A stretch of 64,000 nt of DNA from Glycera tridactyla (GCA_965644265.1 OZ286476.1:78554001-78618000), one strand, 5' to 3'. Shown: positions 9,590 to 61,520, counted from the stretch's first letter. Program-made: numbers and translations. The notes: generated from the sequence alone by a model not told the origin.

Positions 9590-10460
9590 TAGTGATTGTC
9601 TCTTGATGTGTTGCAGGTTTGATCGCGGTTATCTCAGAGATTGTTTCTTGTTGCGTTGTAGGTTTGATTGCTGTCATCTTCTTCATCTGTTCTCGTCACG
9701 TGGCCCCTGTAGACTGGGATGGTGCAAGAATCAGGGGCAAAATCTCTCTCGTCTTCAGTGATTGTTTCTTGTTGTGTTGCAGGTTTGATTGCGGTCATCT
9801 TCTCCATCTGTTCTTGTCACGTGGCCCCTGTAGATTGGTCAGAGTCAGGGGCAAAATCTCTCTCGTCTCCTGTGATTGTATCTTGATGTGTTGCAGGTTT
9901 GATCGCGGTTATCTCAGAGATTGTTTCTTGATATGTTGCAGGTTTGATCGCGGTCATCTTAGAGATTGTTTCTTGATGTGTTGCAGGTTTGATCGCGGTC
10001 ATCTTAGAGATTGTTCCTTGATGTGTTGCAGGTCTAATCGCGGTCATCTTATAGATTGTTCCTTGATGTGTTGCAGGTTTGATGGCGGTCATCTTAGAGA
10101 TTGTTCCTTGATGTGTTGCAGGTCTGATCGCGGTCATCTTATAGATTGTTCCTTGATGTGTTGCAGGTCTGATCGCGGTCATCTTAGAGCTTGTTCCTTG
10201 ATGTGTTGCAGGTTTGATCGTGGCCATCTTAGAGATTGTTCCTTGATGTGTTGCAGGTTTGATCGCGGTCATCTCAGAGATTGTTCCTTGATGTGTTGCA
10301 GGTTTGATCGCGGTCATCTTAGAGATTGTTCCTTGATGTGTTGCAGGTTTGATCGCGGTCATCTTAGAGATTGTTCCTTGATGTGTTGCAGGTTTGATGG
10401 CGGTCATCTTAGAGATTGTTTCTTGATGTGTTGCAGGTCTGATCGCGGTCATCTTCTCCA
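9590..10460 (+). repeat. Acceptor array of the CD225-like exon (45-bp units plus two longer exon-start copies)
   Basis: Unit gattgttccttgatgtgttgcag|gtttgatcgcggtcatctta. Longer copies of the exon start lie at about 9660-9760 and 9780-9870. Confidence 0.88.
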
Positions 10461-10609
10461 TCTGTTCTCGTCATGTGGCCCCTGTAGACTGGGATGGTGC
10501 CAGAGTCAGGGGCAAAATCTCTCTCGTCTTCAGTGTATCCGGCATCGTAGTCAGCTTGGTCACCGGCCTCGTCTTGATACTCATCTTCTTCTCCGAGGAT
10601 TCCCGGTGA
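10437..10609 (+). CDS. Exon encoding the C-terminal half of a CD225/dispanin (IFITM-like) domain
   Basis: gttgcag|GT (phase 1) gives GLIAVIFSICSRHVAPVDWDGARVRGKISLVFSVSGIVVSLVTGLVLILIFFSEDSR*. This follows the CD225 pattern G-x-x-A-x-x-x-S-x-x-SR...D-x-x-GA-R...TM as I recall it. The upstream exon was not identified. Confidence 0.7.
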
Positions 10610-11149
10610 CCACTTCATGACGTCATCATACTCAGCCTCGTTACCGCGTCTGGCTTGCTGGGGAGGTTGCTGCCCGTCTTGCCTGACTACCTCGTCGTCA
10701 TTTCCAGGAAACACCATCAATTTCCACCTCAGTCGCCAAGAGTGCACCCTATTAACATTTCATACCTGCAGTTGGTATTTTACAGCCATTAGAGTTGTGT
10801 CAACTACAAATTGCAGGTGAAATATGAGTTGCTTGAGTCAGTGTGTGTACTTGCGTGCGTGTGTGTTAGTGTGTGTGTGCGTGTGTGTGGCTTGTGGCGG
10901 TAGGTGAGAGTGACTGTTGTCTTGCCAGGTATGTCACGGGTACATTGTTGTGTGGTTAATGCCAGTCTCTTCTATACAGAAGTGACATTTTGAAGTTGAA
11001 CCCTTGCTGCACCGAACCCTTTCCCTTTTCACCTATTGAAACCGCAATGCGTCTCTCATTCATGGTATAATTCCTAGGAACGATTTCGGTTTGTGAACTC
11101 CTTCAGTAGTACTACATGGTCAACAGCAGAACTGCTCCACTAGGGCAAT

Positions 11150-14100
11150 ATTTCATGAAGTGGGGACATGGGGATATGATGAGACTGAGAACTATATTTC
11201 ATGAGGTGGGGATATTGTGGAATACAATAGGACTAGGACGTATATTGCACGAGGGGGTATAAGGGAACTGCGAGCTATATTACATGAGGTGGGGTTATGG
11301 AGGGGGTATACGGGAACTGAGAACTATATTACATGAGGTGGGGATATGGAGGGGGTACAAGGGAACTGACTGAGAACTATATTACATGAGGTGGGGTTAT
11401 GGAGGGGGGATAAGGGAACTGAGAACTATATTGTATGAGATGGGGATATGGAGCTGAAATAAGGAAACTGATAACTATATTGTATTATATTGTATGGGGT
11501 AGGGATATGGAGGGGATATAAGGGAACTGAGAACTATATTACATGAGGTGGGGGTATGGAGGGGATATAAGGGAACTGAGAACTATATTGTATGAGGTGG
11601 GGAAATGGAGGGGATATAAGGGAACTGAGAACTATATTACATGAGGTGGGGATATGGAGGTGAAATAAGGAAACTGAGAACTATATTGTATTATATTGTA
11701 TGAGGTAGGGATATGGAGGGGATATAAGGGAACTGAGAACTATATAACATGAGGTTTGGGGTATGGAGGAAATATAAGGGAACTGAGAACTATATTGTAT
11801 GAGGTGGGGAAATGGAGGGGATATAAGGGGACTGAGAACTATATTATGTGAGGTCGGGGTATGGAGGGGATATAAGGGAACTGAGAACTATATTGTATGA
11901 GGTGGGGGTATGGGGGGGATATAAGGGAACTGAGAACTATATTGTATGAGGTGGGGAAATGGAGGGGATATAAGGGAACTGAGAACTATATTACATGAGG
12001 TGGGGATATGGGAGGGGTATATGGAGGGGGTATAAGGGAACTGAGAACTATATTGTATGAGGTGGGGAAATGGAGGGGATATAAGGGAACTGAGAACTAT
12101 ATTATATGAGGTGGGGGTATGGAGGGGGTATAAGAGAAGTGAGAACTTTATCACATGAGGTTGGGGTATGGAGGGGGTATAAGGGAACTGAGAACTATAT
12201 TACATGAGGTGAGGGTATGGAGGGGTATAAGGGAACTGAGAACTATATTACATGAGGTGGGGGTATGGAGCGGGTATAAGGGAACTGAGAACTATATTAT
12301 ATAAGGTGGGGGGTATGGAGGGGGTATAAGGGAAGTGAGAACTATATCCCATGAGGTGGGGGTATGGAGCGGGTATAAGGGAACTGAGAACTATATTATA
12401 TAAGGTGGGGGGTATGGAGGGGGTATAAGGGAACCGAGAACTATATCATATGGGGTCGGGGTATGGAGCGGGTATAAGGGAACTGAGAACTATATTACAT
12501 GAGGTGGGGATATTGAGGGGGTATAAGGGAACTGAGAACTATATTGTATGAGGTGGGGATATGGAGGGGGTAGAAGGGAACTGAGAACTATATTACATGA
12601 GATGGGGATATGGAGCGGGTATGAGGGAACTGAGAACTATATTACATGAGGTTGGGATATGGAGGGGGTATAAGGGAACTGAGAACTATATTACATGAGG
12701 TGGGGGTATGGAGGGGATATAAGGGGACTGAGAACTATATTATGTGAGGTCGGGGTATGGAGGGGATATAAGGGAACTGAGAACTATATTGTATGAGGTG
12801 GGGGTATGGGGGGGATATAAGGGAACTGAGAACTATATTGTATGAGGTGGGGAAATGGAGGGGATATAAGGGAACTGAGAACTATATTACATGAGGTGGG
12901 GATATGGGAGGGGTATATGGAGGGGGTATAAGGGAACTGAGAACTATATTGTATGAGGTGGGGAAATGGAGGGGATATAAGGGAACTGAGAACTATATTA
13001 TATGAGGTGGGGGTATGGAGGGGGTATAAGAGAAGTGAGAACTTTATCACATGAGGTTGGGGTATGGAGGGGGTATAAGGGAACTGAGAACTATATTATA
13101 TAAGGTGGGGGGTATGGAGGGGGTATAAGGGAAGTGAGAACTATATCCCATGAGGTGGGGGTATGGAGCGGGTATAAGGGAACTGAGAACTATATTACAT
13201 GAGGTGGGGGTATGGAGGGGTATAAGGGAACTGAGAACTATATTACATGAGGTGAGGGTATGGAGGGGTATAAGGGAACTGAGAACTATATCCCATGAGG
13301 TGGGGGTATGGAGCGGGTATAAGGGAACTGAGAACTATATTATATAAGGTGGGGGGTATGAAGGGGGTATAAGGGAAGTGAGAACTATATCCCATGAGGT
13401 GGGGGTATGGAGCGGGTATAAGGGAACTGAGAACTATATTACATGAGGTGGGGGTATGGAGCGGGTATAAGGGAACTGAGAACTATATTACATGAGGTGA
13501 GGGTATGGAGGGGTATAAGGGAACTGAGAACTATATTACATGAGGTGGGGGTATGGAGCGGGTATAAGGGAACTGAGAACTATATTATATAAGGTGGGGG
13601 GTATGGAGGGGGTATAAGGGAACTGAGAACTATATCCCATGAGGTGGGGGTATGGAGCGGGTATAAGGGAACTGAGAACTATATTATATAAGGTGGGGGG
13701 TATGGAGGGGGTATAAGGGAACCGAGAACTATATCATATGGGGTCGGGGTATGGAGCGGGTATAAGGGAACTGAGAACTATATTACATGAGGTGGGGATA
13801 TTGAGGGGGTATAAGGGAACTGAGAACTATATTGTATGAGGTGGGGATATGGAGGGGGTAGAAGGGAACTGAGAACTATATTACATGAGATGGGGATATG
13901 GAGCGGGTATGAGGGAACTGAGAACTATATTACATGAGGTGGGGATATGGAGGGGGTATAAGGGAACTGAGAACTATATTACATGAGGTGGGGGTATGGA
14001 GGGGGTATAAGGGAACTGAGAACTATATTACATGAGGTGGGGATATTGAGGGGGTATAAGGGAACTGAGAACTATATTGTATGGGGTGGGGTATTGATTG
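11150..14100. repeat. G-rich 48-50-bp minisatellite, about 60 units, with higher-order block duplication
   Basis: Unit gagaactatattacatgaggtgggggtatggaggggtataagggaact; identical ORF-track translations at 896-bp offset (11888 and 12784). Confidence 0.92.
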
Positions 14101-60446: not shown

Positions 60447-60593
60447 TGACAGGTACTTCTCCAGATATAATATGTATGGATAAAATTGATGTGATTCTGA
60501 GATCTACAAAATCTATTCAGCCGCACACATCAGAACGTTTGAGAGGCATTTTATTCCGTTATTAAGTTGAAGATCAATTCACCAGACACCTAC

Positions 60594-60951
60594 CTGTCCT
60601 GCCCTCGATCGTTGTCAAACATTCCACGTTCTCAGAAGAGAAAGCGAAGATGTCGGAGAAAGAGTAATCAAAGAAGATGATCATCCAGAGCACCATAAAG
60701 AAGAGAGTGAGCAAGCATTTGATGAGCGAGGTGAAGAGATAGAGACGGGTACGGCCGCGGTGAATGTTCTTCTTGAGTCGGACCATGGCATTACGCAATC
60801 CAGTAAACATGAGATGGTCGTCAGTGAAGTTCTCCCACCAGTAGACAGATGTCAGTATCAGGGAGACGATTGCCGGCCAGATGTCGCCCACACCCAGTTT
60901 AGTGCCGCCGTATGTAGTGAAGGAGAGAGGCACAAACGCCGCCAATGTGAT
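60594..60951 (-). CDS. CHS: Chitin synthase exon C
   Basis: ctttttcag|ATC ... ACAG|GTAGGT, 358 nt, phase 0/1; contains SVYWWENF. Confidence 0.88.
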
Positions 60952-61279
60952 CTGAAAAAGAAAGATTCCACTCAGCTACTTTCATCGTTCTGATCGAGTC
61001 TTCTAAGCCACTATAAGGAGGGAGGCTTTGCAAATCATCCATGTGATCACTCAATATAAATCTGCCGGTGCTCCACAATCATCACCAATGTCTTACATGG
61101 GGCCATTATGATCGAAACCGGGTCGCCTCAAGTCTGGAGGTGCCTGGCTACATGACAAAAGCTGTAATTCCCTTTTATCTGTCAACTGACCGAAACGCCT
61201 TCATATTGGTAGAGGGCGGTACAATCAGTCTCATTACTTGATATTCAATGAATCGATGGCATCCTGCGACGCCAGAAGT

Positions 61280-61520
61280 TTTTAAGTGGTAAGGGCGAGT
61301 ACTGACCTGTAGGAAGGCGACAGTGACATCCGGCGGAGAGGGCAAGTACTGACCTGTAGGGAAGCGACAGTGACATCTGGCGGGAAGGGCGAGTACTGGC
61401 CCGTAGGAAGGCGACAGTGACACCTGGCGGGAACGGCGAGTACTGACCTGTAGGGAAGCGACAGTGACATCTGTCGGAGAGGGCGAGTACTGACCTGTAG
61501 GAAGGCGACAGTGACATCTG
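61280..61520 (-). repeat. Exon B donor array (47-bp units, 5 donors)
   Basis: Donor positions 61494, 61447, 61400 (GT changed to GC), 61353, 61306. Confidence 0.9.

What the first reader, a model, noticed from the sequence alone, without database searches (positions are those of the whole stretch)
9590..61520. Exon boundaries are systematically amplified into tandem arrays, with the real exon always at the proximal end
Seen: 13 of 20 chitin synthase exons have a boundary reiterated (acceptors D, K, M, N, O, P, S, T; donors B, L, Q, R, plus I, whose array starts flush at the GT), and so does the stop-codon end. The CD225-like exon on the opposite strand shows the same. Units are unrelated in sequence (42-150 bp) but share one design: exon edge, splice site, intron flank. 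Acceptor arrays extend upstream with the complete exon last; donor arrays extend downstream with the complete exon first. The spliced ORF stays intact despite roughly 150 decoy sites. Established: exon definition favours the nearest 3'/5' splice-site pair, and tandem duplication of splice sites is a proposed route to intron gain. Inference: a transcription- or splicing-linked duplication process focused on exon edges, and/or a spliceosome that strictly takes the last AG and first GT. I do not know of a named system for this at such density.
Basis: partly seen in the sequence, partly recalled or inferred. Interest (0 to 1): 0.9.

Follow-up and report, generated by a model that had tools for sequence, protein, structure and literature searches.

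The report
Splice-site minisatellites ("mirages") in chitin synthase
A chitin synthase gene of an invertebrate, probably annelid-like, has 12 of its 38 splice junctions and its stop codon copied into tandem arrays, giving about 145 near-perfect decoy splice sites; this kind of repeat is already known as a "mirage" in amphioxus and in human F7, but this density in this lineage appears to be new.

Summary
A 20-exon chitin synthase gene lies on the minus strand (1756-aa uninterrupted spliced ORF, one full-length match to a chitin synthase profile). Twelve exons (B, D, K, L, M, N, O, P, Q, R, S, T) have an edge reiterated in the adjoining intron. So do the stop-codon end and a CD225-like exon on the plus strand. 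In the nine arrays scored (B, D, L, M, N, P, Q, S, T), 123 of 126 decoys keep AG or GT.

- "Real exon always proximal" is a geometric necessity, not a design.
- The system has a name: "mirage" minisatellites, described in amphioxus Adh3, globin, TnC and PGBD5. The human F7 intron-7 VNTR is an experimentally studied case in which the first donor wins by oriented scanning.
- Minisatellites fill 54% of the window, and nine in-gene arrays carry no exon edge.
- Boundary arrays are enriched: 12 of 21 against 3.5 expected, P about 5e-6. The excess disappears if the introns were about 115-150 nt long before the arrays arose.
- The stop-codon array argues against a purely splice-linked process.

The four N gaps all lie in non-coding repeats and break no reading frame.

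The host looks lophotrochozoan. Other agents' notes call it annelid-like, so this is not amphioxus. The scan has noted the same structure in other genes of this genome.

The parts
23874..63134 (-). Chitin synthase gene (type II metazoan), exons A-T. Acceptor first base to donor last base: A ?-62238, B 61698-61495, C 60951-60594, D 58314-58124, E 57846-57650, F 56659-56563, G 54968-54796, H 54506-54427, I 54029-53921, J 52531-52378, K 50329-50119, L 49659-49459, M 43409-43183, N 42329-42153, O 37989-37825, P 35634-35398, Q 34535-34277, R 31564-31256, S 29185-29051, T 24760-23874 (TAG follows).
   Evidence: Spliced ORF of 1756 aa with no stop; one HMM domain, 1668 bits. The start codon lies upstream and was not located. 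The C donor and the choice among the 13 D acceptors are the least certain points.
61291..61494 (-). B donor array: 47-nt unit, 4 decoy donors (3 GT, 1 GC); exon part about 29 nt.
58315..59996 (-). D acceptor array: 135-nt unit, 12 decoy acceptors, all AG, 97% matches between adjacent copies (TRF); exon part 81 nt. All 12 would preserve the ORF if used (+45 aa each).
52831..53920 (-). Intron I-J array: 88-nt unit, about 12 copies, starting at intron position +1 to +4 of the I donor. No exon sequence is repeated.
50330..50493 (-). K acceptor decoy: ttgcag plus about 55 nt of the exon K start, then a (GAT)n tract grown from the exon's GAT GAT codons. It abuts the N gap at 50494-50730, so the copy number is unknown.
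46599..49458 (-). L donor array: unit about 100-134 nt including a (CA)n tract, 24 decoy donors, all GT; exon part 41 nt (encodes [13 protein letters not shown]). Higher-order periodicity of about 956 nt. Three decoys are GTGAGT, closer to consensus than the real GTGAAT.
43410..44495 (-). M acceptor array: unit about 134-151 nt including (TCAA)n, 8 decoys (6 AG, 2 GG); exon part 78 nt (encodes EDRWLCTLILQQGYRVEY).
42330..42550 (-). N acceptor duplication: one decoy (AG at 42459-42458), 128-nt unit, exon part about 39 nt, followed by an interstitial (TTAGGG)n tract.
37990..38748 (-). O acceptor array: 42-nt unit, about 17-18 decoys. The unit is 22 nt of intron, the AG, and exon O sequence lacking 25 nt (encodes AIYAIIM).
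35635..36795 (-). P acceptor array: 94-nt unit, 12 decoys, all AG; exon part 56 nt.
32088..34276 (-). Q donor array: 57-nt unit, 37 decoy donors, all GT (GTGAGT or GTAAGT); exon part about 33 nt. The real copy differs from the homogenised decoys.
30870..30939 (-). R donor decoy beyond the N gap at 30940-31228: a copy of the last 75 nt or so of exon R and the first intron bases, with the AATGCCACCGgtg segment (donor) deleted.
29186..30679 (-). S acceptor array: 77-nt unit, 19 decoys, all AG; exon part 41 nt. The three proximal decoys are closest to the real copy.
24761..25729 (-). T acceptor array: 103-105-nt unit, 9 decoys, all AG; exon part 59 nt. Three decoys would preserve the ORF.
21994..23873 (-). 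Stop-codon array: 96-99-nt unit made of the last 85 nt or so of the CDS, TAG, and about 12 nt. 14 further copies, 13 of which keep TAG.
9577..10606 (+). CD225-like terminal exon (10437-10606) preceded by an acceptor array (about 13 units of 45 nt and 2-3 units of 121 nt), each unit carrying ttgcag|G; exon part about 19 nt.
   Evidence: Pfam found nothing.
38902..42104 (.). Example of a purely intronic minisatellite (23-nt unit, 139 copies) with no exon-derived sequence. Others are at 55034-55935, 55949-56481, 28533-28974, 26466-27525, 25842-26396, and, 3' of the gene, 11251-21945.

Best explanation
These are mirage-type minisatellites.

Proposed origin. In a genome region where minisatellites of many unrelated units are proliferating, short tandem duplications of about 45-150 bp have repeatedly straddled the edge of a coding segment. 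Each then expanded by unequal exchange or replication slippage.

Why the real exon is proximal. Duplications wholly inside exons, or swallowing whole exons, are removed by selection. Those that leave one intact copy contiguous with the rest of the exon are tolerated. The complete exon therefore necessarily sits at the inner end of every array.

How the gene keeps working. The splice sites next to the complete exons give the reference reading frame; only 17 of 126 scored decoys would also keep it open. Acceptor decoys share the real site's upstream context for at least one unit. Donor decoys share its downstream context. Discrimination must therefore come from the exon side: pairing of the nearest acceptor and donor across the exon for acceptors, and 5'-to-3' oriented choice of the first donor for donors. 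Mis-spliced products would be cleared by nonsense-mediated decay.

Shown here: the arrays, their composition, the intact decoy sites, the intact ORF, the enrichment under a stated null, and the age of the introns.
Inferred: the duplication and expansion mechanism, which sites are actually used, and clearance by NMD.
For: - Arrays and decoy integrity: (123 of 126 scored decoys keep AG or GT).
- Minisatellites cover 54% of the window and 64% of the gene's intron sequence. Nine in-gene arrays and all arrays between 11251 and 21945 have no exon-derived sequence.
- The stop-codon end, not a splice site, is amplified the same way, as expected for a filter acting on coding edges in general.
- 109 of 126 decoys would shift the frame or introduce a stop if used.
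- Copies differ from one another (TRF matches about 71-97%; individual decoys 82-100% identical to the real junction probe). The L array has a higher-order period of about 956 nt. In S the proximal decoys are closest to the real copy, and in Q the real copy stands apart from the homogenised decoys. These are the turnover features reported for amphioxus mirages (PMC3087553).
- At least seven arrays sit at intron positions shared with the compact, repeat-free homologue L002, so they arose inside existing introns.
- Published precedents: amphioxus mirages do not disturb splicing (PMC3087553, PMC3902484). In the human F7 intron-7 VNTR the pseudo-donors are functional but silent because the first donor is chosen by oriented scanning (PMC1557585).
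Against: - With this gene's present collapsed intron sizes, random seeding predicts only 3.5 boundary arrays, against 12 seen. Geometry plus selection is therefore sufficient only if introns were much shorter (about 115-150 nt) when the arrays were seeded. Array-free introns of this gene are 277-990 nt today.
- The splice junction lies near the middle of the unit more often than a uniform breakpoint predicts (P = 7e-4, post hoc). This model does not explain that.
- No transcript data are available, so which sites are used and whether NMD acts are unverified.
- The taxon is not firmly identified.
Confidence: 0.72

Rival explanations
1. Junction-targeted duplication. Splice junctions in the DNA are themselves hotspots for tandem duplication in this lineage, for example through transcription- or splicing-coupled stalling, R-loops and template switching. 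Arrays are then seeded preferentially on exon edges.
For: - Enrichment of 12 of 21 against 3.5 expected (P about 5e-6), and 9 of 18 against 2.7 for TRF-only arrays (P = 2e-4).
- Units tend to be centred on the junction: mean |exon fraction - 0.5| is 0.099 against 0.215 +/- 0.037 (P = 7e-4).
- The I array begins within 4 nt of the junction.
- The first-stage scan noted the same structure in other genes of this genome (untested).
Against: - The stop-codon end is amplified in the same way although it is not a splice site.
- Nine in-gene arrays and about 10 kb of arrays 3' of the gene have no junction.
- The enrichment shrinks to non-significance if pre-array introns were about 115-150 nt, which is roughly the intron size in homologue L002, estimated from the gaps between its exon matches.
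- The centring test was chosen after seeing the data, and P weakens to roughly 0.01 (a hand estimate) if the flush I array is counted.
- No such mechanism is known.
Confidence: 0.18
2. Functional decoy arrays. The arrays are kept because they regulate the gene. They could recruit U1 or U2AF to strengthen exon definition or protect long introns, or provide in-frame alternative acceptors that lengthen the protein by whole units (exon D +45 aa steps, exon T +35 aa steps).
For: - All 12 D decoys and 3 T decoys would preserve the ORF.
- Unit length is a multiple of 3 in 6 of 9 sharply periodic boundary arrays, against 4 of 17 other arrays (Fisher P = 0.04).
- Decoy sites are not degraded: 123 of 126 are canonical, and some are closer to consensus than the real site.
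Against: - High similarity between copies is what concerted evolution of young arrays produces without any selection.
- 109 of 126 decoys would destroy the ORF.
- The D unit encodes polypyrimidine-tract-derived peptide with no match to the chitin synthase profile.
- The multiple-of-3 signal is weak.
- One open 45-codon unit among about 13 arrays is not unexpected by chance.
- Compact homologue L002 works without any arrays.
Confidence: 0.07
3. Assembly artefact. The tandem copies were generated or inflated by misassembly, and the real boundaries are single-copy.
For: Two of the four N gaps cut directly into boundary arrays (K and R). The assembler clearly struggled here, and copy numbers are uncertain.
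Against: - Copies within an array differ at many positions, with ordered variant patterns and higher-order periodicity. An artefact would give identical copies.
- Thirteen independent arrays with unrelated units share the same layout.
- The same phenomenon has been verified by PCR, resequencing and RT-PCR in amphioxus and in human F7.
Confidence: 0.03

Closest known systems
"Mirage" minisatellites of amphioxus (Adh3, Canestro et al. 2002, as cited in PMC3087553; globins BflGb6 and BflGb9, PMC3087553; TnC and PGBD5, PMC3902484)
   Same: - Minisatellite-like tandem duplications whose unit spans an intron-exon boundary.
- Both 5' and 3' boundaries are affected.
- Units run from tens of bp to about 160 bp.
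- Most copies keep AG or GT.
- The authentic copy lies at the array edge and is excluded from homogenisation.
- The ORF and normal splicing are unaffected (shown by RT-PCR in amphioxus).
   Different: - Published cases have a few copies (3-6 in BflGb6) at one or two boundaries per gene. Here 12 of 38 boundaries plus the stop codon carry arrays of up to 37 copies.
- The host here groups with lophotrochozoans, not cephalochordates (other agents' notes).
- Splicing and length polymorphism were not testable here.
Human F7 intron-7 37-bp VNTR (PMC1557585)
   Same: It is a minisatellite whose first unit spans the exon-intron boundary, so the authentic donor is followed by identical pseudo-donors that stay silent. 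This is the same layout as the B, L and Q arrays.
   Different: - It is a single locus with a handful of copies in a mammal.
- The mechanism, 5'-to-3' oriented scanning that selects the most upstream donor, was shown by mutagenesis there and is only inferred here.
- It does not cover acceptor arrays.
Intron gain by tandem duplication of AGGT-containing exon segments (Rogers model, as discussed in PMC3087553)
   Same: Tandem duplication creates extra splice signals next to an exon.
   Different: Here the introns already existed. At least seven arrays sit at intron positions shared with a distant compact homologue. No new intron is seen to have formed.
Earthworm metallothionein intron minisatellites (PMC12783039)
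   Same: Large intronic minisatellite blocks and untranscribed exon duplications in annelid genes.
   Different: The passages I read (keyword passages only) do not describe units that span a splice junction.

Membership tests
[quoted passage not shown] | A tandem, head-to-tail array with a minisatellite-size unit (about 10-160 bp) | tested here: met
   TRF periods are 42-150 nt with 4-37 copies.
[quoted passage not shown] | Each unit contains an exon edge, the splice signal and the adjoining intron flank | tested here: met
   Copies span the junction by at least 5-6 nt on each side at B, D, L, M, N, P, Q, S and T. O carries an internal deletion. K and R lie next to gaps. Exon parts are 19-81 nt. 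Not met for the I array.
[quoted passage not shown] | The authentic exon is the terminal copy and the gene's reading frame stays intact | tested here: met
   The spliced ORF is 1756 aa with no stop and aligns full length to the HMM.
[quoted passage not shown] | The decoy sites do not disturb normal splicing (RT-PCR in the published cases) | not testable with these tools
   No transcript data are available. The only indirect evidence is that 109 of 126 decoys would break the ORF.
[quoted passage not shown] | Length instability or allelic copy-number variation | not testable with these tools
   Only one assembly is available. Gaps inside the K and R arrays are merely suggestive.
Metazoan type II chitin synthase | GT2 catalytic core with the EDR and QRRRW motifs and a full-length match to metazoan chitin synthases | tested here: met
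   Pfam Chitin_synth_2 matches exon L. EDRWLC and QRRRW are present in exon M. The model scores 1668 bits against the chitin synthase profile and is about 45% identical to mollusc chitin synthases.
CD225/dispanin family (plus-strand exon) | Match to the CD225 domain | tested here: inconclusive
   Pfam gave no hit. In the protein atlas, 98 of 100 nearest named clusters are CD225, with a top score of 0.89. The exon would encode only half a domain.

The most novel reading that the evidence does not exclude
In this lineage the DNA of splice junctions is itself a hotspot for tandem duplication. Units are seeded centred on the junction by a transcription- or splicing-coupled process, genome-wide. 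The result is genes that carry hundreds of perfect decoy splice sites and depend wholly on exon-side context for correct splicing.
Probability: 0.18. Interest if true: 0.8.

Novelty: new member of a known kind. Interest (0 to 1): 0.5.

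Why it matters
Mirages have been reported only as anecdotes: a few amphioxus genes and human F7. 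In the library I searched I found no genome-wide study, and the one paper that addresses their origin calls the mechanism unclear.

This gene carries about 145 decoy sites that are nearly identical to the real ones at 12 junctions. It is therefore a natural experiment on splice-site choice. Because each decoy shares the real site's intron-side context, any discrimination must come from the exon side, or from decay of mis-spliced RNA.

If the host is indeed an annelid-like lophotrochozoan, and if the scan's other notes from this genome hold, the phenomenon is not peculiar to cephalochordates. It could then be studied genome-wide in one assembly. Two direct questions follow: are junctions mutational hotspots, or are short introns plus selection enough; and do such arrays feed intron or exon evolution?

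There is also a practical point. These arrays mislead gene predictors and assemblers; two gaps here fall inside arrays.

Tried and rejected
- Amphioxus origin. This was my first guess, because mirages are described there. I dropped it for three reasons.
  - In an ML tree the chitin synthase sits with annelid, brachiopod and mollusc sequences, not with fish (support is weak).
  - The best full-length matches are molluscs at about 45% identity.
  - Other agents' notes on this genome report annelid-type genes, including an innexin.
- Whole-library phmmer with exon A found no close full-length relative; the best hit was 46% identity on a 244-aa fragment. The species and its near kin seem to be absent from the protein collections.
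- Cluster look-ups gave names only for Lingula.
- The accession of the closest contig (GCA_022702835.1) is in no held paper.
- An exact look-up of the window's own ORF found nothing.
- Alignment A1, made of the 20 exon fragments and a Lingula chitin synthase, misplaced most fragments. I did not use it.
- Rfam and tRNA scans of the window found nothing.
- Loci for P0002 and P0008 could not be fetched. L003 lies at a contig end.
- Canestro et al. 2002 (PMC117041) is not held. I cite it only through PMC3087553.
- Hidden exon-edge origin of the non-boundary arrays: rejected, because they show no similarity to any exon with 60-nt flanks.
- An alternative O acceptor 25 nt downstream: rejected, because it breaks the frame and LQFAALLS aligns with other chitin synthases.
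- An exon hidden in a gap: rejected, because the profile alignment is continuous across J/K, M/N and R/S.

Full report
**What is in the window**

Tandem Repeats Finder reports 29 minisatellite loci of period 10 nt or more and length 150 nt or more. Together they cover 34,739 of 64,000 bases, or 54%.

A metazoan chitin synthase lies on the minus strand. I built a profile from 46 full-length animal chitin synthases fetched and ran it against the six-frame translation. It gave 20 collinear exon matches from 63098 down to 24054.

I chose splice sites by reading phase, consensus and continuity in profile coordinates. The M donor was corrected by eye to CAG|gtcagt at 43183. The result is a 5268-nt coding sequence with no stop. 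It aligns to the profile as a single domain covering positions 44-1556 of 1572, at 1668 bits. The start codon lies upstream of the open frame of exon A and was not located. The weakest points in the model are the C donor and which of the 13 identical D acceptors is used.

**The assembly gaps**

All four gaps are in non-coding repeats.
- 17084-17249 sits inside a (GATG)n tract 3' of the stop codon.
- 30940-31228 starts 27 nt after the R donor, in intron R-S.
- 42826-43010 lies in CCA-type simple sequence of intron M-N.
- 50494-50730 lies in intron J-K.

The introns that hold gaps have phases 0, 0 and 1. The exons on either side join in frame, and the profile alignment runs continuously across these joins, so nothing from the gaps is needed for the ORF. 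Whether the DNA on the two sides of each gap is contiguous cannot be told. Two gaps cut into boundary arrays (K and R), so those copy numbers are unknown. I did not try to fill any gap.

I searched with 60-80-nt probes centred on each of 38 splice junctions and on the stop codon, and required matches to cross the junction by at least 5-6 nt on both sides. Extra copies were found at:
- B donor: 4
- D acceptor: 12
- L donor: 24
- M acceptor: 8
- N acceptor: 1
- P acceptor: 12
- Q donor: 37
- S acceptor: 19
- T acceptor: 9
- stop codon: 14

No copies were found by this search at the other 29 junctions; O, K and R were added by inspection (next paragraphs).

The O array was missed by this criterion because its 42-nt unit is a deletion derivative. 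It consists of 22 nt of intron, the AG, CTA, and then exon O sequence from 25 nt further in, which encodes AIYAIIM. Fourteen O decoys matched my pattern; the TRF copy number implies about 17-18.

K has at least one upstream copy of ttgcag plus about 55 nt of exon. It is followed by a (GAT)n tract grown from the exon's own GAT GAT codons and it abuts a gap. R has a copy of its last 75 nt or so beyond a gap, with the donor deleted. The I array starts at intron position +1 to +4 and repeats no exon sequence.

On the plus strand, a 56-codon terminal exon at 10437-10606 is preceded by about 13 units of 45 nt and a few units of 121 nt, each carrying ttgcag|G. Pfam does not recognise it. A protein-atlas search places it next to CD225 clusters, which is a lead only.

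Of 126 decoys scored (B, D, L, M, N, P, Q, S, T), 123 keep AG or GT. Three L decoys (GTGAGT) are closer to consensus than the real L donor (GTGAAT).

**What the "proximal exon" rule means**

It is not evidence of design. If a segment made of intron flank plus exon edge is duplicated head to tail, only the copy that adjoins the rest of the exon can be a complete exon. For acceptors that is the last copy; for donors it is the first.

A second point follows from periodicity. Every acceptor decoy has the same upstream sequence as the real acceptor for at least one unit. Every donor decoy has the same downstream sequence as the real donor. Nothing on the intron side can therefore distinguish the real site from the decoys. 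The distinction must come from the exon side or be made after splicing.

I built the alternative transcript for each decoy. 109 of 126 would shift the frame or introduce a stop. Only 17 would keep the ORF: all 12 at D (+45 aa steps), 3 at T, 1 at B and 1 at L.

**Is the concentration at exon edges more than chance?**

Inside the gene, arrays make up 64% of intron sequence. Nine in-gene arrays have no similarity to any exon with 60-nt flanks. The same is true of the arrays between 11251 and 21945 and those at 7098-9333.

As a null, I collapsed every array to one unit. This left introns of 196-2103 nt, median about 460. I then placed each unit at random in the collapsed gene, excluding placements wholly inside an exon or containing a whole exon or intron.
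- Expected boundary-spanning arrays: 3.5 of 21. Observed: 12. P is about 5e-6.
- Using TRF-detected arrays only, which avoids my targeted search at junctions: 9 of 18 against 2.7 expected, P = 2e-4.

The result depends on intron length. With introns scaled to a median of 229 nt, the expectation is 6.2 (P = 0.003). At 151 nt it is 8.1 (P = 0.04). At 114 nt it is 9.4 (P = 0.14).

A homologous chitin synthase on metagenome contig L002 is compact, with the chitin synthase exon matches spanning about 7 kb. Its introns are mostly about 75-200 nt (one about 420 nt), read from the gaps between exon matches, and it has no minisatellites. Against that, the array-free introns of this gene are 277-990 nt today. 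The excess is therefore real under the gene's present geometry, but it is not proof of a junction-targeted process.

**Two further regularities**

- The junction lies near the middle of the unit. The exon fractions are 0.62, 0.60, 0.37, 0.53, 0.30, 0.67, 0.60, 0.58, 0.53, 0.56 and 0.42. The mean distance from 0.5 is 0.099, against 0.215 +/- 0.037 for a uniform breakpoint (P = 7e-4). I chose this test after seeing the data. By a hand estimate, P weakens to roughly 0.01 if the flush I array is counted.
- Unit length is a multiple of 3 in 6 of 9 sharply periodic boundary arrays, against 4 of 17 other arrays (P = 0.04).

Neither regularity is explained by the main model. I record both as unexplained.

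**Evidence against a purely splice-linked origin**

- The stop-codon end is amplified in the same manner. Its unit is the last 85 nt or so of the CDS, TAG and about 12 nt, with 14 further copies. A stop codon is not a splice site.
- The arrays did not create the introns. The junctions at profile positions about 250, 344-387, 710, 848, 980 and 1034 are shared with L002, and they carry the B, D, K, L, M, O and P arrays.

**What is known**

Tandem repeats that span an exon-intron boundary were named "mirages" in the amphioxus Adh3 gene. They have been reported for amphioxus globin, RDH, presenilin, TnC and PGBD5 genes. In those cases the units are 10-160 bp, most AG/GT signals are retained, splicing is normal, copy number differs between haplotypes, and the array-edge copies are excluded from homogenisation (PMC3087553; PMC3902484). 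I could not read the original Adh3 paper.

In humans, the 37-bp VNTR of F7 intron 7 starts with a unit that spans the exon 7 boundary. Its pseudo-donors are functional but silent, because the most upstream donor is chosen by 5'-to-3' oriented scanning. Fifty constructs were used to show this (PMC1557585).

For acceptors, selection by pairing with the nearest downstream donor across the exon (exon definition) is the established model. It fits the logic above but is untested here.

**Whose genome?**

It is not demonstrably amphioxus.
- Whole-library phmmer with exon A found nothing closer than 46% identity.
- The best full-length matches are mollusc chitin synthases at about 45% identity.
- In an ML tree of 914 columns the protein sits beside the annelid clade (Owenia, Capitella) and Lingula, and far from fish. 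The deep nodes have weak support, 32-75%.
- Follow-up notes by other agents on other windows of this genome describe annelid-type genes, including an innexin and giant cuticle collagen. I could not test those claims here.
- First-stage notes also list the same splice-site minisatellites in a kinase, a K+ channel, a DOCK gene and a transglutaminase gene of this genome. These are untested leads.
- Searches of the held library for this structure turned up no report of mirages in annelids. An earthworm metallothionein paper describes large intronic minisatellites and untranscribed exon duplications, but, in the passages I read, no junction-spanning units (PMC12783039).

**Verdict**

- The structure is a known kind of repeat, the mirage minisatellite. 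Here it occurs at an unreported density and, apparently, in a new lineage.
- The best-supported explanation is a by-product of rampant minisatellite formation, filtered by selection on coding sequence. Correct splicing would be secured by exon-side context, with decay of mis-spliced RNA.
- A junction-targeted mutational process is not excluded. The enrichment and the centring of units keep it alive at roughly one chance in five.

Noticed in passing
window 58052-60154 (-): A 701-codon open frame runs through all 13 units of the D acceptor array (135 nt, or 45 codons, each). Any D decoy would therefore add whole 45-aa blocks in frame. The encoded peptide is derived from the polypyrimidine tract and has no chitin synthase match.
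   Followed up: partly
window 45404-46292 (+), inside intron L-M: Remnant of an ISXO2/IS1595-type DDE transposase (Pfam PF12762, E = 7e-7), broken by stops into three open pieces.
   Followed up: partly
window 42383-42416: An interstitial telomere-like (TTAGGG)n tract lies between the decoy and the real acceptor of exon N.
   Followed up: no
window 46599-49458 (-): The L donor array has a higher-order period of about 956 nt. The same succession of unit variants recurs at 47814/48770, 47702/48658 and 47576/48532, as expected from unequal exchange in multi-unit register.
   Followed up: partly
window 52198-52369, 34978-35388, 50349-50440: Trinucleotide-type simple repeats start within about 10 nt of the J and P donors. 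A (GAT)n tract has grown out of the GAT GAT codons in the K decoy copy.
   Followed up: no
window 205-858 and 7098-8081: Two arrays of the same 50-nt unit, in the same orientation, lie 6.2 kb apart. They could be the two ends of a duplicated segment or of a mobile element carrying terminal arrays.
   Followed up: no
window 11251-23955: The 12.7 kb 3' of the chitin synthase stop codon is largely (about three quarters) minisatellite, with units of 49, 41, 53, 124, 56 and 99 nt.
   Followed up: partly
L002:9899-17104 (+): A compact chitin synthase homologue on an ENA metagenome contig (sample ERZ25069296). The chitin synthase exon matches span about 7 kb, its introns are mostly about 75-200 nt (one about 420 nt), and it has no minisatellites. 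It shares about ten intron positions with the window gene. The same sample holds a paralogue (L003).
   Followed up: partly
window 32088-34276 (-): Each 57-nt Q unit carries a consensus donor (GTGAGT) followed 15 nt later by an acceptor-like tctcttcag|GT. The array is thus a string of potential 42-nt pseudo-exons. Read in the exon Q phase, they hit TGA at the fifth codon.
   Followed up: no
I did not examine it.
   Followed up: no
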